A stretch of 63,814 nucleotides of DNA, filler included, from Octopus bimaculoides (lineage: Eukaryota), in assembly GCF_001194135.2 (NCBI RefSeq). It is 5 parts of 4 records of this genome, joined end to end, with 100 filler letters (N's around TTAATTAATTAA, not from the genome) between each part and the next. Parts side by side here need not be neighbours in the genome. Positions count along the whole stretch, not along the records: positions 1 to 13,243 come from NC_068985.1; 4 more parts are not named here. One strand, given 5' to 3'. The position numbers were made by a program, and so were the translations under genes. The notes beneath the pieces were generated by a model, which was given only the letters and a program-made list of their open reading frames with translations, did not search any database and was not told the DNA's origin. Of the stretch, positions 1 through 12,725 are shown in pieces (position 1 is the first letter of the stretch; each line of letters opens with the position of its first letter).

Positions 1-232
1 CAAAAAAGGATAATATCTTTTACAAGAATTTTATCAGGAAGCTAGTGTGCAAAAAAATTCGTATGGGAAATTTCTATTCCCAAGAATATACTTATTCGTT
101 TATATATATATATAAAGGGCATTACTACAGAATAATGCCACACACTAGACTTCCCAAATAAACACATTTTACTACCGAACGCAAGGAAAACAACTTTTGA
201 AAGAAACCAACATTTAAAAAAAAATAAACTCA

Positions 233-295
233 ACTATGTATCGACCGATTTCACGATTACCAGAATGAAATCTAGTTTCCGTTCGTCAGCATAGT
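233..295 (-). ncRNA. Type I hammerhead ribozyme, minus strand, complete core
   Basis: Minus strand reads ACUAUG-CUGACGA-ACG gaaa CUAG auuucauu CUGG uaau CGU-GAA-AUCG gu CGAU-A-CAUAGU. Helix I is 6 bp, all core nucleotides are present, and the predicted cleavage follows AUA (between 239 and 238). Confidence 0.8.
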
Positions 296-449
296 ATAGT
301 ATCAACACGAGTACCGAGAACAACTCAGAAAGATTCCTGCTTTTTTACCGATGTATGTGGATAAACATCATTCCCTTTGCTGGGCCGGATACATGCGTGT
401 TCGTTTTGGTAAGGTGAGAATTCTGTTTATTTGTATAAGTTGATACTAT

Positions 450-512
450 ACTATGCTGACGAACAGAAACTAGATTTCATTCTGGTAATTGTGAAATCGG
501 TCGATACATAGT
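450..512 (+). ncRNA. Type I hammerhead ribozyme, plus strand, complete core
   Basis: Helix I 450-455/507-512, CUGACGA 456-462, helix II ACA(463-465)/UGU(490-492) plus CUAG/CUGG, GAAA 493-496, helix III AUCG/CGAU, AUA triplet with predicted cleavage after 506. Confidence 0.8.
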
Positions 513-636
513 TGAATTTATTTTTTTGTAAATGTTGGTTTCTTTCAAAAGTTGTTTTCCTCGCATTCGGTACTAAAATGTGTTTATTTGGGAAGTCTAG
601 TGTGTGGCATTATTCTGTAGTAATGCCCTTTATATA

Positions 637-1140
637 TGTAGTGAACACCACTCTTTCCCACTGTTATAAATATAATCAAGTTCGGGCGTAGCAGAGAGCA
701 GCCTGCTGTATCCATCACATGACTGACTATTCTTTGCGCGGGTAAATTATCTCCATTTGCCCCCAGGACGCAAACTGACCAACCACAGTCACTAATAAGA
801 TCACGTGAGAGTGTTTTTTCTAATGCTTCTCTGGAGCCTACCTTCAGCTATAAATAGACTAAATTATACGCGCCTCAGATCGCCTAGATCTGGCCGCCGG
901 CCACACACGCGTAACACAGCCAGCCCGTACAACATCAACCAGCCAGTTCCAGCGACGACATCAACAACACCATCGTTCAGCTACGAACTACAAGCATCGC
1001 CCTCGACGTCGTCAGCAGCAACACGACTCTACGACTACCAGCATCGCCGCCAGCGTCAACATGACTTTCTACACGTACACAAGCTACCAACAACTACCTC
1101 AGCACTTTTCAGTCCTGTTTGTGTGATTCACCTCACCACG
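637..1140 (+). mobile_element. Candidate solo LTR (Gypsy-like)
   Basis: Begins TGTAGTGA and ends TCACCACG (near-inverted termini), has TATAAATA near 848 and is CpG-rich. No clear TSD or PBS. Confidence 0.35.
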
Positions 1141-2973: not shown

Positions 2974-4395
2974 TCAGGTCATCCCATAAATTCTGTCCGA
3001 ATTTTGAATAAAGAAAACAAATTATCAAATGTTATATTTAATTGAAATTTAATCATCACTTTCCCTGATTATCTATGACTTCCTTCCATCTATTTACAAG
3101 CTTTTTAGTCCCATCAATGTAAAACTCTTTTGGTTTCAAAGCGAAGAATTCTGAAATGTCAGTTTCGACCTCCTCCCAGCTTGTGAAAGTTATGTCCCCC
3201 AAATGATTCTGTAAACTACGAAACAAATGGTAGTATGAAGGAGCAAGGTCGGGAGATTAAGGTGGATGAGAAATTTTTTCCCAACCAAGCTCTTCGATCT
3301 GTGATGTAATCTTTGCTGTGTGGGGTCGTGCATTGTCCTGATGAAACATCACTCCTTTTTGATTCAATAAAGCGGGTCTTTTTTTCTTCAAAGCTTGGTT
3401 CAAACGCTCTAATTGCTGACAGTAAGACTTGAATATTGATTGTAGCATTAGGTGGTAACAATTCAAAGTGAATTACTCCTTTGCAATCCCACCAGATAGA
3501 GAGAAGAATCTTTTTTCCTATGAAGTTCCCTTCTCGGTTGTGGTTGAGCTTTTTTCCTTTTACCAAGCCACTGTTTACAACGTTTAACATTTCGATAGAA
3601 GATCCATTTTCCATCACTAGTCACATGTCTATCCAAAAAGGGTGAAATGAGTTTGCGAGAATGGAAAGAAGAGCAGATGTCAACTCGGGATTTGCAGTTG
3701 CTTTCAGACAATTCATGAAGCACCCATTTTCCAAGTTTAAGAACCTTTCCAAGTTGTTGAANNNNNNNNNNNNNNNNNNNNNNNNNNNNNNNNNNNNNNN
3801 NNNNNNNNNNNNNNNNNNNNNNNNNNNNNNNNNNNNNNNNNNNNNNNNNNNNNNNNNNNNNNNNNNNNNNNNNNNNNNNNNNNNNNNNNNNNNNNNNNNN
3901 NNNNNNNNNNNNNNNNNNNNNNNNNNNNNNNNNNNNNNNNNNNNNNNNNNNNNNNNNNNNNNNNNNNNNNNNNNNNNNNNNNNNNNNNNNNNNNNNNNNN
4001 NNNNNNNNNNNNNNNNNNNNNNNNNNNNNNNNNNNNNNNNNNNNNNNNNNNNNNNNNNNNNNNNNNNNNNNNNNNNNNNNNNNNNNNNNNNNNNNNNNNN
4101 NNNNNNNNNNNNNNNNNNNNNNNNNNNNNNNNNNNNNNNNNNNNNNNNNNNNNNNNNNNNNNNNNNNNNNNNNNNNNNNNNNNNNNNNNNNNNNNNNNNN
4201 NNNNNNNNNNNNNNNNNAAGGGTCTTAATCAAAGAAATTTTAATATTATTATTCCGTAAAATAATACTTAATTAGTTTAAATGTACACAAATGCATAAAA
4301 ATAATTTTTAATTCCATTAGACATTCTAAAATACTATTAAATTTCATTCAATTTTAAAAAAGGTAAAATCGGACAGAACTTATGGGATGACCTGA
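2974..4395 (-). mobile_element. Mariner (Tc1/mariner DD34D-type) transposon, inactive, both TIRs and TA TSD present, N gap inside
   Basis: 27-bp TIRs TCAGGTCATCCCATAA(A/G)TTCTGTCCGA at 2974-3000 and 4369-4395, each flanked by TA. Frameshifted transposase motifs VTSDGKW, LLSIWWDCKGVIHFELLP, FHQDNARPH, HPP. Confidence 0.93.
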
Positions 4396-5204: not shown

Positions 5205-7853
5205 GCTTTTATGTGACACCTCATGGGTGCTTTTACGTGACACTGCCATGAATCCTTTGCATTACCAGAGGGACCAGTCTTAACATTTCTACTGTGGAGT
5301 ATGGGTCTTCTTGAGTACAGCAAGGCACCAGGTATCTTTGTCCTTTGTCATCTTGCCAGAAAAGTCAGCATCCTGAGGATGTTCTTCATCCTATGTCTTC
5401 CTGGGTGTTCCACTTCCACATATTCAATCTGCTTTGAAAGATCAGCACTTCTTTATGGAGCTGTCAGCATCCATCTGCATCACATGACCAAACCAGTGCA
5501 GTCTTCTCTCTTGCACACAGCAACTAATTTCTCTTATTCCTAACTTCTCTCTCTCAATACACTAGCACTCTGTCATACATGTACACTCACACTACACATC
5601 CAATGGAGCATACTAACCTCATTCCTTCCTAACCTTTGCATATCCTCTGCATTCAGGGCCAACATCTCACTACCATGTAGAATTGCTGTCTGTATACATG
5701 CATCATACAATCTTCCTTTCAGAGAAAACTTTTGTGGCCAACAAAGGTAACAGCTCTCTGAATTTCCTCTGTTCTATTCTTATTCAAGTTATCACATTCT
5801 CTGTGCATCCTCCCCCACTACTAATTTGGTCCTCTAGGTTGCAGAAATTACATACTACCTCTAATGAGCCACCAAGGCATTTGAGAGAATCAATTTCCTG
5901 AGCTTTTATGGATTATGTACATCTTCCACATGCGAAAACTATCTTCTCTGATAATCTTCCTATTAATCCACTGCACCTCTTGTGTATCCATAGCTAACAC
6001 TGAGCACACTATATGGAGTTACTGTCTACACCTTTCCTACAAATCGAACAGGGTCACTTACCTAAGTGAGGTAGAGTCTTGTTAGATTTCTTGCTTAATA
6101 AAACCTTAGCTTTTGTTAAGTTAACTTTAATGACCTTAGATTTCAGGTTTTATTTTCGCACCTAGTTTTTCTCATCTAGCTCTGATATGGAATCCACTAT
6201 GAGGGTAAGATCATCAGCATATAGTAGTTCCCAGGAGCTGCTGGTCTTGAATTCTTCTGTTATGGCCTGGAGGAAGATATTGAAAAAGCGGGGACTAAGT
6301 ACTCAGCCTTAATGACTCCCTGCCTGTACACCAAATTCTTCACTGTACTCTTGGTTAATTTTCACCTTATTGACAGCATCTTTGTTCGTGGCCCATACAG
6401 CTTTCACCAGTCTATCCCTGGCCTCCTTCTCAGACCCCACCACATCACGCTGCATGGTACTTTATTGAAGGGTTTCTCTAGATCAATGAATGCCAAGTAT
6501 AATGGTTTATTCTTAGCTTAATACTTCTCTTGTAGTTACCTGACAATTAAAGTAGTGTCAGTAGTGTTTCTTCCCCAGACAAGCCAAATTGCATTTCATA
6601 CAGCCTAATTCTGCTCCTAATTAATTGGGCTATAACTCTCTCCATAATTTTCATCAACTGATCCAGGAGTTTGATGCCTCTATAGTTGCTTCTATCTAAA
6701 GCATCACCCATACTAACAATTATGCTACTTTGTCAATCACTGGGTATTACACCTTCCTCAATGACCTGATTAATAACTATGCATGGGAGTAGCCCATCTC
6801 TTACCTTACTGGATATTTTGAGCATTTCAGCTGTGATTCTTGATGGATCAGGTGCTTTTCTAGAGTTCATGATTTTAATTACTTTATCTACCATACTGCT
6901 ATCCATGAGGATAGCCAGTCCCTCTGTTGGGTTTACCCAAGGAAGTCTCCCTTTATCCCATTCAGTACCTACAGTCATCAATCTCACATTAACTTTTGCA
7001 TGCCTCTTTCTTGTCCACACCACTATGTACAAGCATGCTATTATCCATCCACATGCATTTCTCTCCTACAATATTTTCTCACTGACATACTGTCTAGCAA
7101 TCAGGAACACTTTAAGTTTCTGATCTTCACACTGTAAGACATTGGTACACCTCTTCTTTTCTGCTTCTACCCTAACTAGATAGACCTGATGTCTAGCCTT
7201 TCTTTTAGCCTTCTGCTATGATTCTTTACTACCACACTCCTCTTTTCCACTCTTTCCAGACCTGTCTCTTCTCTATTATGACCCAGTCAACGTCACTGTT
7301 CACACTTGGTCTGGTGGAGGCTTTGCTTCAACCAAAAATTTGTTTGTCTGTTTCTCTTAGTAGATTGTCCTGCAAGAACTTCCAGTTGTCCTCTATGTCA
7401 TATGTCTCTATCACTCTCTTCTCATCATAGACCTTCTCGAGGACTTCTCTAAATCTCTGTCCATTTGAAGGATCCTTGAGATTCCACAACCTCCTTTTCC
7501 ATATTGGCTTGTCTGGATTTTTCTGGCAATAAGTCTGAAGTCAGTAACCACTAACTTATGCTGAGTTATACATTCTTCCCCTGGGAAATATTTTGTATTT
7601 ATGAGCATGTATCTATCCCTAAGTGTGGTGAGAATGTAGTCAATCTGGTTGGTATGTCCCCCAGATTGATAAGTAATCAAGTGGTTGGCAGGTTTCTGAA
7701 GCTGGTGTTGCAAACCAGTAAGCCATGAGCATCACACAATTTCAGCTGTCTTGTCCTCTCTTCATTTCTGGAGCCAATGCCAAAGCTGTCATGCACACCC
7801 TGAAATCCATCAGACTATTTTCCAACATGTCTATTGAAGTCTCTTGCCATGAT
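5205..7853 (-). mobile_element. RTE-clade LINE, 5'-truncated and degraded (APE end, RT, 3' UTR)
   Basis: Minus-strand motifs DFNRHVGK, NQIDYIL and PGEECITQHKLVVTDF (APE), KAPDPSRITAEMLK, and LYADDL near 6200-6220. The C-terminus matches the 9.9-10.3 kb copy. Confidence 0.9.
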
Positions 7854-7854
7854 G

Positions 7855-8838
7855 CATGTGTGTGTATGTGGGTGCGTGTACGTGGGGTTGTGAGTGTTAG
7901 ATAAGTGCGCATTTGTGTGCGTGTGTGCGCATGTGTGTGTGTGTGTGCGTGTGTGTGTGTATGTGCGTGTATGCGTGTGTGTGCGTGTGTGTATGTGTGC
8001 GTGCGTATATGTATATATTGTGTGTGCACGCATGTGTGTATATGAGTTTGTGTATTCGTGTGTGCGTGAGATTGCGTGCGGGGGTATATGTGCGTTCCTC
8101 TGTGTGTGCGTGCGTGTGCTTACGTGCATGTGTGCGTGTATGTGCGTGTGTGTTTATACCCATGTGTGTGTAATTGTGTGCGTGTCTGTATGAGTGTATG
8201 TTGCGTGTGTGTGGCAGGTATGTGTGTACATGGGCGAGTGTGTGTATGTATGTGTGTGTATATGTGTGTGTGTATGCAAGTATGTGCGTGTGTGTGTATA
8301 TGTGTGTGTGAACGTGGAGATGTGTGTCGAATTATGTTTGCGTTTTGTTGCTTGCATGTGCGCGCGCGCGCGTGTGTATGTGGTTGTGTGTATATGTGTA
8401 CGCTAAATTGTGTGTCTGTGTGTATGTAGGTATGCGTGTCTGTGTATGGGTTAGGTATGTGTGCATTCATGTGCGTGTGTATGTGTGTGCGCGTTTGTGT
8501 ACGTGTGTATGTGCGCGTGTTGTGTGTCTGGTGTGTGTGGGAGGTATATGTGAGGTATATGTGCATGGATGTGTGTGCGCGTGGGTGTATGTGTATGTAT
8601 GCGTATGTGTGTGCGTGTGTGTCTGCGTGCATGTGTGTGTGTGCGCGTATGCGTGTGCATGCATGTGTTTGTGCGTGTGTGGATGTGTGTGTGGATGTAT
8701 GCGTATGTGCCTGTATGTGTGTTGTATGTGTGTGGTATTTATGGGAGGTATATGTGAGTTCATGTGTGTGCACGGGTGCGTGTATTTTTTCGCGTGTTTG
8801 TATATGTACGTGTGTGTGTGTATGTGTGCGTGTATATA
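7855..8838. repeat. About 1-kb degenerate (GT/AT/GC) dinucleotide satellite
   Basis: Alternating purine-pyrimidine sequence. It is the source of the many H/T and C/V-rich spurious ORFs. Confidence 0.95.
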
Positions 8839-8899
8839 GAAGTAAAATATTAATTATAACAAAATAAGGTTGATAGAGAATAAAGAAATTAATACAGTA

Positions 8900-9429
8900 T
8901 AAAATAAGCCACAGGGTGTGACGTAATGGCGGAGGCAACGACTAAGAAAAGTGAGATGGCTAGAGTGGCGAGTTTTTTTAAAAGCAAGTGAGAGAGTTTT
9001 TTTACGGGTTGCAAGTATTGGCGGGGGCGGGGAGAAAACGGCAAAGAAGGGATTGAAGGTACTGGAGGAAGAAGTGGAGATCAGGCATGGTGAGAGGGTG
9101 TGAATGTCGGTGTAGGTGTTATTGGTGGAAAAGAGAAAGGGGAGGAGAGTGGAAGTAGAACAGAAGATAGGTAGAAGGAGGACGAGATAAAGTAGAAGAT
9201 TCACGGACAAATTGTAATGATTCCTAATCAAGGTGCAGAAATGGCGTAATCCGAATGAACAGGAACTGATGAAGGAGATGTTTCTATGTGGCTTGCTTGT
9301 TTGTTGTACCTTGTTTATCATTTTGTCCATGTTCTTTTGCCACGTCATGTACCTAGTTATGTATCTATATGTACATGTAGATGAAGGTATGTACATACAT
9401 GTACATATATATGCATATACTCATATATT

Positions 9430-9684: not shown

Positions 9685-9821
9685 NNNNNNNNNNNNNNNN
9701 NNNNNNNNNNNNNNNNNNNNNNNNNNNNNNNNNNNNNNNNNNNNNNNNNNNNNNNNNNNNNNNNNNNNNNNNNNNNNNNNNNNNNNNNNNNNNNNNNNNN
9801 NNNNNNNNNNNNNNNNNNNNN

Positions 9822-10460: not shown

Positions 10461-11430
10461 CAATTCATCAAAGAGCGATTTTCACAAACAACTATTTCTT
10501 TCTCACCTACCCACTAACGTCCAAACCATCCTCGCACCCATGTGCGACATCAGTACCATTGAACAACTGGTGACATCAGCCGATAAAATAATGGATATAA
10601 CCACTCCGACATTACCTTCTCCTTCTCCTTCCCTTACCATAGCGGCTATAGCATTCCAGTTCCAGGATTTTCGACACACCAGGAAAAAACAATACCTGGT
10701 AGTGGAAGTTCGCAACCTCCGTTTGGAAAGGAATACAGCTCCACGTGCTAGACACCGAACTCCCTCTAGATCTCTATCTAGACATCGGTACGTCGGTAAT
10801 AAGGGATCGATATGTTACCACATACCTATTTCGGCGCCAAGGTAAGGAATTGCACACTACTTTGCTCATATAATACCCAGGGAAACACCTGAAGGGAGCA
10901 ATAAGAATGGCTACTGTCTCTGGTATCACTCCACCAAGTCGTGCAATTTTTACCAAGGATGAAATTTCCCAGAAAAACTTCCTGGTTGATTCAGGTGCTG
11001 CCTGTAGTTTCTGGCTAGCCAAATATATGCACAGAAAACCTTGTCCTACAGCCACTACCTTGCAAGCAGTCAACCATTCACCCATCACCACAAATAGCGA
11101 AATTTCTCTCACCTTGAATATACGACTCAGACGAGGCTTCCAGTGGGTTTTTCTAGTTGCCGATCTGCCGTACCTGATACTTGGGAGCAGATTTTCTCTC
11201 CCATTTTCTTTGCTGGTCAATCTGAACAACAGACAACTTCTAGACGCAAATCAGTGTACGTGGCACTGACTGATTTGTTTCCACAGTCAGCCCGTTTTTC
11301 TTTGTCGCTGCTGCTGCCAGCAAATACCACGCATTGTTGAAGTCTTTCCTGGAGTTAACGAAACCCATGTCCTATGGAAAGGAGAAATCATTCTCCGTAG
11401 AACACCATATTTCGACCACGGGCCCTCCTA
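10460..11430 (+). mobile_element. Gypsy LTR-retrotransposon gag and aspartic protease fragment (pseudogenised)
   Basis: Gag-like QLFLSHLPTNVQTILA, protease FLVDSGA, RRGFQWVFLVADLPYLILG, and linker HHISTTGPP. Confidence 0.85.
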
Positions 11431-11432
11431 TT

Positions 11433-11612
11433 ATAGGTCTCAATTTGAGGTCATTAGGAGTAGGGATTTTGATTATTATGTCTGTGGCTATCCTGCATGC
11501 GTTACTTATTTTCTCACATTTGTGTATCTTGAGAATACCGTAGAATTGACTGGTTTTAGTTTTGAAATTGGTCATATAGTCATATTCTTTGTCGGTGAGC
11601 CCTTCTCTGTAT
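11433..11612 (-). mobile_element. Penelope-like RT N-terminal fragment (inverted part)
   Basis: SQFYGILKIHK...LKLRPII matches the PLE FYGLPKIHK...PLRPI motif. Confidence 0.8.
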
Positions 11613-12310
11613 AGGTTTAACATGGAGAACCTGATATACGCACTAACCTGCTCTGGTTGTCAAGAGCAATACATAGGCCAAACAAAAAACAGTCTACATC
11701 AAAGGATGGCTCTGCACAGATCCCAGATCAAAATTCCCCAAAAAAGAAAAATAGCATTTAGCCAACACATCGACATTTGCGCCAATAACAAAAATCCAAG
11801 CTTCAGAATTTTTCCCCTCTACCAATTCAGGGACGATACAACCTGTAGCCAACGAATTAGTTAGGAGACTCTCTTTATTTTGAACGCAGCTACAACAAAC
11901 GACATATCCACCACGGCCTAAGAATAACACAAACGCAAATATTAAAAATGATTCATTCAAGAGATACCCAAGAATTCATTAAAAGCAGTCCCAATCACTG
12001 CTATAATTCACAACGAGCCACTTTTAGGTCACTTGACCATTTAACATCCTACTACTATCATGCCATCCCGCATTCCCTTATTATTCTCTCTTCTCTTTCT
12101 TCTTATACATCTTCTTCTTCTTCTCTGCCACCTCCTTCCTTACTTTACTACTACTGCTGTTTAGAATAACACCTATGCAAATATTATAAGCAATACATTC
12201 AAAAGAGATATCTCGAGAATTCAATCACTACCACCATCCACAACAAATCACTTTCAGGGCACTTGACCATTTAACATCCTACTACTATCATAACACTCCC
12301 GCATTCTTCT
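11613..12310 (+). mobile_element. Penelope-like GIY-YIG endonuclease fragment plus 3' region with partial tandem duplication
   Basis: NLIYALTCSGCQEQYIGQT...QRMALHR...SQHIDIC. The segment CACTTGACCATTTAACATCCTACTACTATCAT occurs at about 12030 and about 12260. Confidence 0.85.
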
Positions 12311-12330
12311 TCTTCTGCTAGTAGCATAAT

Positions 12331-12613
12331 TTGTTTTGTTGGCACTCGCTTACGACGACGAGGGTTCCAGTTGATCCGATCAACGGAACAGCCTGCTCGT
12401 GAAATTAACGCGCAAGTGGCTGAGGACTCCACAGACACGTGTACCCTTAACGTAGAGTACAGCAGGGTTCTCCACCATCCCCTGCCGGAGCCTCGTGGAG
12501 CTTTAGGTGTTTTCGCTCAATAAACACTCACAACGCCCGGTCTGGGAATCGAAACCGTGATCCTATGACCGCGAGTCCGCTGCCCTAACCACTGGGCCAT
12601 TGCGCCTCCACAC
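12331..12613 (-). mobile_element. tRNA-derived SINE with 11-bp TSD
   Basis: Minus-strand head TGGCCCAGTGGTTAGGGCAGCGG...GGTTTCGATTCCC. TSD AGTAGCATAAT at 12320-12330 and 12614-12624. Confidence 0.9.
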
Positions 12614-12635
12614 AGTAGCATAATAATAGTAGAAT

Positions 12636-12725
12636 AATAATAGTAGAATTGAATAAGTAATCTAGTTTGAGGGTAGTACTGAACTACCCTCAAACTAGAT
12701 TGCTTATTTAAATTCTACTATTATT
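12636..12725. repeat. About 42-bp-stem hairpin with 5-nt loop
   Basis: AATAATAGTAGAATTGAATAAGTAATCTAGTTTGAGGGTAGT actga ACTACCCTCAAACTAGATTGCTTATTTAAATTCTACTATTATT. The inner 19 bp are perfect. Confidence 0.9.

What the first reader, a model, noticed from the sequence alone, without database searches (positions are those of the whole stretch)
109..637. Foldback element with a complete hammerhead ribozyme on each strand
Seen in sequence: about 198-bp inverted arms each hold a type I HHR reading outward from the centre (plus 450-512, minus 233-295). All core nucleotides are present, helix I is 6 bp and the triplet is AUA. Helix III (AUCGGUCGAU) can form as a hairpin or as a 10-bp self-complementary dimer. 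The two arms differ by a pairing-preserving double change in helix II (ACG/CGU versus ACA/UGU), although both changes are CpG transitions and could be coincidental. Each outer end has a small hairpin (GGCATTA-8 nt-TAATGCC, 118-139). Established: minimal type I HHRs occur in Penelope-like element pLTRs, and retrozymes carry HHRs in direct repeats. Inference: this inverted layout gives a rod-like RNA with a ribozyme in either polarity, and it could not release a monomer circle from one copy. It may be a non-autonomous ribozyme-bearing mobile family that I do not recognise as described.
Basis: partly seen in the sequence, partly recalled or inferred. Interest (0 to 1): 0.9.

Follow-up and report, generated by a model that had tools for sequence, protein, structure and literature searches.

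The report
Head-to-head retrotransposon ends carrying hammerhead ribozymes
The inverted repeat and a hammerhead ribozyme motif on each strand are real, but the layout is what Penelope-like retrotransposons are already known to leave behind when two truncated copies insert back to back, so it is an ordinary example rather than a new kind of element.

Summary
Arms 105-306 and 439-640 are 96% complementary. The core is 117-306 and 439-628, 190 nt with 7 differences. Each arm carries a type I hammerhead motif reading outward: 450-512 (+) and 295-233 (-). A strict descriptor gave 0 hits in 1000 shuffles of the window. Caveats: no Rfam hammerhead model scores it, pair 10.1-11.1 is A-U rather than G-C, and cleavage is untested.

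The interpretation as an undescribed mobile family is not supported. Published work on Penelope-like elements (PLEs) already reports each key feature:
- inverted 5'-truncated copies lying side by side;
- pairs of hammerheads 100-700 bp apart on opposite strands;
- insertion into AT-rich or (TA)n DNA;
- cutting and extension of both target strands.

The element sits in a (TA)n tract with both 3' ends facing outward. A PLE-type GIY-YIG endonuclease fragment lies in the same window.

Best reading (0.65): one insertion in which reverse transcription was primed from both nicked strands. This left two 5'-truncated 3' ends that now do nothing as ribozymes.

I could not obtain other copies from the host genome, so a foldback family that moves as a unit is not excluded. 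Interest is low.

The parts
101..116 (.). Left flank: (TA)7 followed by AA. Target microsatellite. The exact element boundary is ambiguous because TA is palindromic.
   Evidence: Read from the sequence; the repeat finder runs the inverted repeat out to 105.
117..306 (-). Left arm: a 190-nt 5'-truncated copy whose sense strand is the minus strand. Its 3' end lies at 117, against the left flank.
   Evidence: Inverted repeat; arm alignment with 7 differences.
233..295 (-). Type I hammerhead motif. Helix II closes with ACGG/UCGU. Predicted cleavage between 239 and 238.
   Evidence: Descriptor scans; pattern search; hammerhead-fold energy -11.6 kcal/mol.
118..139 (-). 3'-terminal stem-loop of the left copy: 7-bp stem GGCAUUA/UAAUGCC with an 8-nt loop. 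Candidate start site for reverse transcription (inferred).
   Evidence: Read from the sequence. Comparable to the stem-loop where the PAc element starts reverse transcription (PMC11167929).
307..438 (.). Unique 132-nt centre, 40% G+C. Probably the extra upstream sequence of whichever copy was truncated less. Which strand it belongs to is undetermined.
   Evidence: No significant similarity to the arm on either strand, and no long open frame; no match elsewhere in the window.
439..628 (+). Right arm: a 190-nt 5'-truncated copy whose sense strand is the plus strand. Its 3' end lies at 628, against the right flank.
450..512 (+). Type I hammerhead motif. Helix II closes with ACAG/UUGU. Predicted cleavage between 506 and 507.
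   Evidence: hammerhead-fold energy -10.4 kcal/mol.
606..627 (+). 3'-terminal stem-loop of the right copy, the mirror image of 118-139.
   Evidence: Read from the sequence.
629..637 (.). Right flank: TT followed by (TA)3 and T. The other part of the target microsatellite.
   Evidence: Read from the sequence.

Best explanation
The 512-bp element (117-628) is the dead product of one retrotransposition event by a Penelope-like element (PLE), or by a PLE-dependent, retrozyme-type non-autonomous RNA.

Proposed steps (inferred):
1. The GIY-YIG endonuclease nicked both strands of a (TA)n tract.
2. Each exposed 3'-OH primed reverse transcription near the 3'-terminal stem-loop of a template RNA.
3. Both cDNAs stopped early, one after about 190 nt and the other after about 322 nt.
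4. Their 3' ends were joined in the middle, and each was copied to make the second strand.

The result is two 5'-truncated copies head to head, with their 3' ends against the flanks. Each carries the hammerhead that lies in the pseudo-LTR about 120 nt upstream of the element's 3' end.

At this locus the ribozymes probably do nothing:
- there is one motif per strand, and its helix III needs a partner copy;
- any read-through transcript would fold into a 190-bp hairpin;
- that hairpin would at most be a substrate for small-RNA production.

Shown here: the inverted repeat, the two motifs, the (TA)n flanks, the lack of coding capacity, and a PLE endonuclease fragment in the same window. Inferred: the PLE origin of the arms and the priming from both strands.
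For: Structure:
- Two arms share the same outer end and have different inner ends around a unique centre.
- Hammerheads read outward, so the 3' ends abut the flanks. This is the geometry expected if both nicked target strands prime cDNA synthesis.

Target:
- The flanks are (TA)7 and (TA)3.
- Naiad-clade PLEs show a (TA)n insertion bias, and the same bias has been proposed for Neptune PLEs (PMC8557442). The PAc enzyme prefers AT-rich DNA (PMC11167929).

Literature:
- Dual minimal hammerheads 100-700 bp apart on opposite strands are attributed to truncated PLEs (PMC4209133).
[quoted passage not shown] Here a stem-loop lies 100-121 nt downstream of the cut site.

Ribozyme type:
- Open helix I and a short helix III with a self-pairing loop, as in metazoan PLE and retrozyme hammerheads.

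Host:
- GIY-YIG domain at 11589-11861 (Pfam E=2.9e-5). Two cysteines lie between the GIY and YIG motifs and two histidines lie after them, the CCHH signature of canonical endonuclease-bearing PLEs.

Age:
- 4 of the 7 arm differences are CpG transitions, which fits decay after insertion.
Against: - No parent PLE with a matching pseudo-LTR was found. The only PLE fragment in the window shares no similarity with the arms and has no hammerhead.
- No other copy of the arms could be retrieved from any collection. A series of different 5' truncation points, the signature of retrotransposition, is therefore unproven.
- The one-sided 30-40-bp 'tail' typical of PLE insertions is not visible. Both arms end at the same nucleotide.
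- The flanks also allow a TA target-site duplication, as for a Tc1/mariner-type miniature transposon. A mariner transposase fragment is in the window.
- Rfam hammerhead models do not score the motif, and 10.1-11.1 is A-U.
- The pairing-preserving double change in helix II could mean that two different template RNAs were used.
Confidence: 0.65

Rival explanations
1. A non-autonomous foldback family that moves as a unit. Either a PLE reverse transcriptase copies a read-through transcript ending in the 3' stem-loop, or a DNA transposase recognises the long terminal inverted repeats, as for a miniature inverted-repeat element with a TA duplication.
For: The arms run right up to the flanks with a possible TA duplication. 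Total size is 512 bp with no coding capacity. A mariner transposase fragment lies in the same window. No literature describes such a family, so it would not have been named.
Against: Hammerheads of this architecture are known from PLE pseudo-LTRs and retrozymes, not from DNA transposons. The termini (AAGGGCATTAC...) do not resemble mariner/Tc1 ends as I recall them (from memory, not tested). There is no second copy in 13 kb. A 190-bp perfect hairpin RNA would be a poor template. The known PLE insertion mechanism already yields this layout without invoking a family.
Confidence: 0.12
2. Two independent insertions of 5'-truncated PLE ends, in opposite orientation, into the same (TA)n hot spot.
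For: (TA)n tracts are preferred targets. The arms differ at 3.7% of positions. The helix II double change keeps pairing, as expected if two different functional source RNAs were copied.
Against: No (TA)n remnant or duplicated target separates the two 5' ends; only TATAA at 434-438. The second event would have had to land exactly at the 5' end of the first. 96% identity is high for a ribozyme class described as extremely variable within a genome.
Confidence: 0.1
3. A DNA copy of a rod-like, possibly circular, RNA replicon with a hammerhead in each polarity: an animal counterpart of viroid-like or retroviroid-like RNAs.
For: There is a hammerhead on each strand and a rod-like fold. The outer ends could close into two small hairpins.
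Against: The arms are 96% complementary over 190 nt, and most mismatches are CpG decay. This points to recent duplication at the DNA or cDNA level, not an evolved imperfect rod. A near-perfect duplex prevents hammerhead folding: -331 kcal/mol against about -11. The locus is a single copy flanked by a microsatellite. The motif is type I, as in PLEs and retrozymes.
Confidence: 0.03
4. An assembly artefact, or a chance palindrome with chance hammerhead-like motifs.
For: The window has assembly gaps, and PLE structures are known to confuse assemblies.
Against: The arms are not identical and enclose a unique 132-nt centre. The strict hammerhead descriptor gave 0 hits in 1000 shuffles.
Confidence: 0.02

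Closest known systems
Penelope-like element insertions: pseudo-LTRs with hammerheads, and an inverted 5'-truncated copy adjacent (Cervera & de la Pena 2014, PMC4209133; Craig et al. 2021, PMC8557442)
   Same: Type I hammerhead with a short, self-pairing helix III. Inverted truncated copies side by side. Two hammerheads about 150 bp apart on opposite strands. Insertion into a (TA)n or AT-rich target. A long helix II, as in PLE minimal hammerheads.
   Different: Neither copy is attached to an RT/GIY-YIG open reading frame. No one-sided 30-40-bp tail. Pair 10.1-11.1 is A-U, and there is no unpaired base between positions 9 and 10.1. Helix I is 6 bp, as in canonical type I motifs, rather than 4-5 bp. 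No parent element has been identified.
Metazoan non-LTR retrozymes (Cervera & de la Pena 2020, PMC7229834; Li et al. 2026 preprint, 10.64898/2026.07.22.740005)
   Same: Short, low-G+C, non-coding DNA carrying a type I hammerhead. Helix I of 6 bp and helix II of 4 bp, each followed by a loop. Probably mobilised by PLEs.
   Different: Retrozymes are head-to-tail tandem repeats of 150-450 bp that give circular RNAs. Here there is no direct or tandem repeat of the unit, only an inverted pair. No monomer can be excised.
PAc (Poseidon of Anolis carolinensis) in vitro insertion (PMC11167929)
   Same: Both target strands are cleaved and extended. The target is AT-rich. Reverse transcription starts in a stem-loop roughly 100 nt downstream of the hammerhead cut site. 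Uncleaved RNA serves as template. These features are consistent with intact hammerheads inside both arms here.
   Different: In PAc the open reading frame starts inside the hammerhead. Here the frame after the cut site is open for 117 nt but has no ATG and no homologues.
LINE-1 twin priming inversions (from memory, not checked here)
   Same: Both target strands prime cDNA synthesis, giving an inverted junction inside one insertion.
   Different: In twin priming the second primer anneals internally on the same RNA, so the two segments are different parts of the element. Here the two segments are the same 3' part copied twice.
Viroid-like RNAs with hammerheads in both polarities (Avsunviroidae, carnation retroviroid-like element; from memory)
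   Same: A hammerhead in each polarity and a rod-like fold.
   Different: Those are imperfect rods shaped by selection, and they circulate as RNA. This is a near-perfect DNA palindrome at a single chromosomal site.

Membership tests
Hammerhead ribozyme, type I | Conserved core: C3 U4 G5 A6 N7 G8 A9, G12 A13 A14, A15.1-U16.1, and H17 (not G) | tested here: met
   CUGACGA ... GAA A...U A on both strands.
Hammerhead ribozyme, type I | Three helices around the core, with helix I open and helices II and III closed by loops | tested here: met
   Helix I is 6 bp. Helix II is 4 bp, then an AA/AA internal loop, then 6 bp and a hexaloop. Helix III is 3 bp with a GGUC loop. The fold is feasible at -10.4 and -11.6 kcal/mol.
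Hammerhead ribozyme, type I | G10.1-C11.1 pair at the base of helix II (highly conserved according to PMC4209133) | tested here: not met
   It is A10.1-U11.1 in both arms.
Hammerhead ribozyme, type I | Scores against the Rfam hammerhead covariance models | tested here: not met
   No hammerhead hit at gathering score or at E<=10, even on 83 nt. PLE minimal variants were originally found with descriptors, not with these models.
Hammerhead ribozyme, type I | Self-cleavage at the predicted site | not testable with these tools
   Needs in vitro transcription. Related PLE motifs cleave poorly, and only as dimers.
Penelope-like element insertion | Reverse transcriptase plus GIY-YIG open reading frame belonging to the copy | tested here: not met
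   No such frame lies within or next to 117-628. A PLE-type GIY-YIG fragment exists 11 kb away, but it is unrelated at the DNA level.
Penelope-like element insertion | Hammerhead located in the terminal (pseudo-LTR) region near the 3' end of the inserted copy | tested here: met
   The cut site lies 122 nt from each outer end.
Penelope-like element insertion | 5'-truncated copies in tandem and/or inverted arrangement | tested here: met
   Inverted pair with a common outer end and unequal inner ends. That these are truncations of a longer element is inferred.
Penelope-like element insertion | Insertion into an AT-rich or microsatellite target | tested here: met
   (TA)7 on the left and (TA)3 on the right.
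Penelope-like element insertion | Optional 30-40-bp tail at one end only | tested here: not met
   Both arms end at the same position. The feature is optional, so this is not disqualifying.
Penelope-like element insertion | Arm sequence shared with the pseudo-LTR of a full-length element in the same genome | not testable with these tools
   The host genome is not in any searchable collection.
Non-LTR retrozyme | Head-to-tail tandem repeats of 150-450 bp, each with a hammerhead | tested here: not met
   No direct or tandem repeat of the unit.
Miniature inverted-repeat or foldback DNA transposon | Terminal inverted repeats plus a target-site duplication, and many copies with identical ends | tested here: inconclusive
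   Inverted repeats are present and a TA duplication is possible, but it cannot be told apart from the (TA)n tract. Copy number cannot be tested.

The most novel reading that the evidence does not exclude
The 0.5-kb foldback is one member of a family that propagates as a unit through a rod-like, perhaps circular, RNA carrying a working hammerhead in each polarity. That would make it an animal, genome-encoded counterpart of retroviroid-like elements.
Probability: 0.05. Interest if true: 0.8.

Novelty: new member of a known kind. Interest (0 to 1): 0.25.

Why it matters
As it stands the value is modest.
- It is a clean, compact example of the inverted, doubly 5'-truncated insertions that Penelope-like elements make. 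Its geometry fits the recent in vitro finding that a PLE enzyme cuts and extends both target strands.
- It shows a hammerhead variant that Rfam models miss: A10.1-U11.1 and a long helix II interrupted by an AA/AA loop. Model-based scans may therefore undercount such motifs.
- If transcribed, the locus would give a 190-bp hairpin RNA that could feed small-RNA silencing of the parent family.

Only if genome-wide data showed that the foldback itself is the mobile unit would it become a notable new variant.

Tried and rejected
- Rfam at gathering score, and at E<=10 on 571 nt and on 83 nt: no hammerhead family. The only hits were chance snoRNA, histone and lncRNA matches.
- Hammerhead pattern scans of the public collections. 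Metagenome contigs gave 7 hits, which share nothing with the element beyond the bases I specified and lie in contigs of 46-60% G+C. The prokaryotic genome collection gave 3 hits, all in bacterial genome bins and not examined further. Viral contigs gave none.
- Protein-level route to other copies. The open frame running through each arm (43 aa, aligned pair) has no relatives. The PLE endonuclease frame has none either. An exact look-up of the neighbouring frame 805-1248 is not on record. I ran no further search on a route I estimated at under 5% chance of success.
- Searching the paper library for sequence strings of the ribozyme and the terminal hairpin: nothing.
- Searching for 'hammerhead ribozyme' with 'foldback': no relevant paper.
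- Testing whether the centre is a partial second unit (tandem or circular permutation): no significant similarity to the arm on either strand.
- Treating the helix II double change as covariation: rejected as decisive. Both changes are CpG transitions in a CG/CG step, where 3 of the 4 possible decay combinations keep pairing. I estimate about 0.05-0.08 by chance.
- Hammerhead constraint after duplication: 2 differences in the 63-nt motif against 5 in the other 127 nt, so no signal.
- Pfam for the reverse-transcriptase-like frame at 11375-11623 (-): no hit even at E<=10.
- PMC522041 (Penelope endonuclease paper): not held.

Full report
**What is there**

The repeat finder reports one large inverted repeat in the first 1.5 kb. 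Its arms are 105-306 and 439-640, 202 nt, 96% complementary, with 132 nt between them. The outermost 12 nt of each arm are AAA/TTT plus a palindromic (TA)n run. The element proper is therefore 117-628 (512 bp), with 190-nt arms that differ at 7 positions. The flanks are (TA)7 on the left and (TA)3 on the right.

The 132-nt centre is unique:
- it has no significant similarity to either strand of the arm;
- it has no match elsewhere in the window.

There is no tandem or direct repeat of the unit.

**The ribozyme motifs**

Each arm reads as follows on its own sense strand:
- helix I: ACUAUG
- core: CUGACGA
- helix II: AC(G/A)G-AA-ACUAGA-UUUCAU-UCUGGU-AA-U(C/U)GU
- core: GAA
- helix III: AUC-GGUC-GAU
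- cleavage nucleotide: A
- helix I return strand: CAUAGU

My descriptor scan of all 13.2 kb on both strands finds only 450-512 (+) and 295-233 (-). A relaxed descriptor for minimal variants finds the same two. That descriptor allowed an optional bulge after A9, the U3-A8 core variant, and little or no helix III.

The motif is more than chance. A strict descriptor hit 0 of 1000 dinucleotide shuffles of the window, and a loose one gave 0.07 sites per shuffle. The exact pattern is expected 0.00 times.

The hammerhead fold is feasible at -10.4 and -11.6 kcal/mol. It is 4.4 kcal/mol above an alternative fold that pairs U4-C7 with the 3' side of helix III. The 10-nt helix III self-duplex, with two G-U pairs, is worth -8.4 kcal/mol.

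There are three caveats:
- No Rfam hammerhead model scores the sequence, even at E<=10 on 83 nt.
- Pair 10.1-11.1 is A-U, where G-C is described as highly conserved.
- Nothing here tests cleavage.

**What the literature already says**

*Cervera and de la Pena 2014 (PMC4209133).* Metazoan Penelope-like elements (PLEs) carry type I hammerheads in their flanking repeats. Helix III is short or absent and self-pairing, so the motifs are thought to work as dimers, and they cleave poorly in vitro. [quoted passage not shown]

*Craig et al. [quoted passage not shown] (TA)n tracts are the preferred target of the Naiad clade, and the same bias has been proposed for Neptune PLEs. An optional 30-40-bp tail can sit at one end.

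*The 2024 in vitro study of the anole element PAc (PMC11167929)*:
- It prefers AT-rich DNA and is predicted to be a dimer.
- It starts reverse transcription in a stem-loop 111-118 nt into the open reading frame. That is 85-92 nt downstream of the hammerhead cut site.
- It uses uncleaved RNA as template.

*Metazoan retrozymes.* These are tandem arrays with canonical type I hammerheads. They are now argued to be non-autonomous derivatives of PLE pseudo-LTRs.

**How the locus fits**

If both nicked strands of a target prime cDNA synthesis from the 3' region of a template RNA, each copy's 3' end abuts a flank and the two truncated 5' ends meet in the middle. That is what is seen:
- The hammerheads read outward.
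- Both arms end at the same nucleotide next to the (TA)n flank.
- Each arm ends in a 7-bp stem-loop (606-627, mirrored at 118-139), 100-121 nt downstream of the cut site.
- The inner ends differ by the 132-nt centre, as expected if one cDNA ran about 190 nt and the other about 322 nt.

Both arms contain the whole hammerhead upstream of the cut site, so the template was not cleaved there. This agrees with the PAc result.

The host has canonical PLEs. A GIY-YIG domain lies at 11589-11861 (Pfam E=2.9e-5). Two cysteines lie between its GIY and YIG motifs and two histidines lie after them, the CCHH signature of endonuclease-bearing PLEs.

**What the ribozymes do here**

Probably nothing.
- Each strand has one motif, so no unit-length RNA can be released.
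- Helix III is too weak to act alone.
- A read-through transcript of 117-628 folds into a 190-bp hairpin of -331 kcal/mol, which buries both motifs. Such a hairpin could feed small-RNA pathways. That is inference only.

**The helix II double change**

The two arms differ by G/A and C/U at paired positions, so G-C becomes A-U. Both changes are CpG transitions within a CG/CG step. The inferred ancestral arm had 8 CpGs, and 4 of the 7 arm differences are CpG transitions. Three of the four possible pairs of decay outcomes at that step keep pairing. I estimate the coincidence at about 0.05-0.08.

Differences are no rarer inside the 63-nt motif (2) than in the other 127 nt (5). There is therefore no sign of selection on the ribozyme since the duplication.

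**What could not be done**

The decisive test is whether many loci share these boundaries, or whether arms occur alone with scattered 5' ends and on full-length PLEs. That needs the host genome, which none of the collections holds:
- Pattern scans returned only matches in metagenome contigs and bacterial genome bins. The metagenome matches share nothing with the element beyond the specified bases; the three in bacterial genome bins were not examined further. Viral contigs gave none.
- Protein searches with the arm frame and with the PLE endonuclease frame found nothing.
- An exact look-up of the neighbouring frame failed.
- Sequence strings are not in the paper library.

**Rivals**

- A foldback family moving as a unit, by PLE reverse transcription or as a TA-duplicating miniature DNA transposon, is not excluded (0.12). 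A mariner fragment is in the window.
- Two independent insertions into one hot spot (0.10) would explain the helix II change. It would not explain the lack of any target remnant between the two 5' ends.
- A cDNA of a viroid-like RNA with hammerheads in both polarities (0.03) is disfavoured. The near-perfect duplex and the CpG-type mismatches point to a recent duplication.
- Artefact or chance is unlikely (0.02).

**Verdict**

The best explanation is a head-to-head pair of 5'-truncated ends of PLE or retrozyme type, made in one insertion primed from both strands (0.65). It is a new member of a known kind, with interest 0.25.

Noticed in passing
window 11589-11864 (+), tail to about 12320: A 5'-truncated PLE copy. 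The 91-aa frame has a GIY-YIG domain (Pfam E=2.9e-5) and the PLE-type CCHH signature. It is followed by a partial tandem duplication (11921-12061 against 12163-12291, 80-86% identity) that looks like a pseudo-LTR. No hammerhead was found in it with either descriptor.
   Followed up: partly
window 11372-11623 (-): An 83-aa frame containing FYGILKIHK...LRPIIGG. From memory this resembles the N-terminal reverse-transcriptase motifs of PLEs. Its start overlaps the start of the endonuclease fragment on the other strand, which would be a second head-to-head PLE arrangement. No Pfam hit even at E<=10, so it is unconfirmed.
   Followed up: partly
window 12320-12615 (-): A tRNA-like head with sequences resembling A and B boxes (TGGCCCAGTGGTTAGGG, GGTTTCGATTCCC), followed by about 200 nt. 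It looks like a tRNA-derived SINE inserted right after the PLE tail. ARAGORN and Rfam do not call a tRNA.
   Followed up: partly
window 3219-3617 (-), next to the N run 3762-4217: A mariner-type transposase fragment (Pfam Transposase_1, E=5.4e-13) beside an assembly gap. A second gap lies at 9685-9821 between a (GT)n and a (GA)n tract.
   Followed up: partly
window 10907-11269 (+): A frame with a D-S-G-A motif and a later ILG-like motif, suggesting a retropepsin from an LTR retrotransposon. No Pfam support.
   Followed up: no
window 7700-8950: More than 1 kb of degenerate (CA/TG)n-like low-complexity DNA with strong G-C skew (+0.2 to +0.6). It produces many spurious long frames rich in His-Thr or Cys-Val.
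   Followed up: no
window 512-691 (+) and 233-42 (-): The frame that starts right after each hammerhead cut site stays open through the rest of the arm (117 nt) and into the flank. In PAc the element's reading frame spans this region. Here there is no ATG and there are no homologues.
   Followed up: yes
window 12649-12711: A 29-nt inverted repeat (93% complementary) with a 5-nt spacer inside AT-rich, ATA-repeat DNA. Not examined.
   Followed up: no
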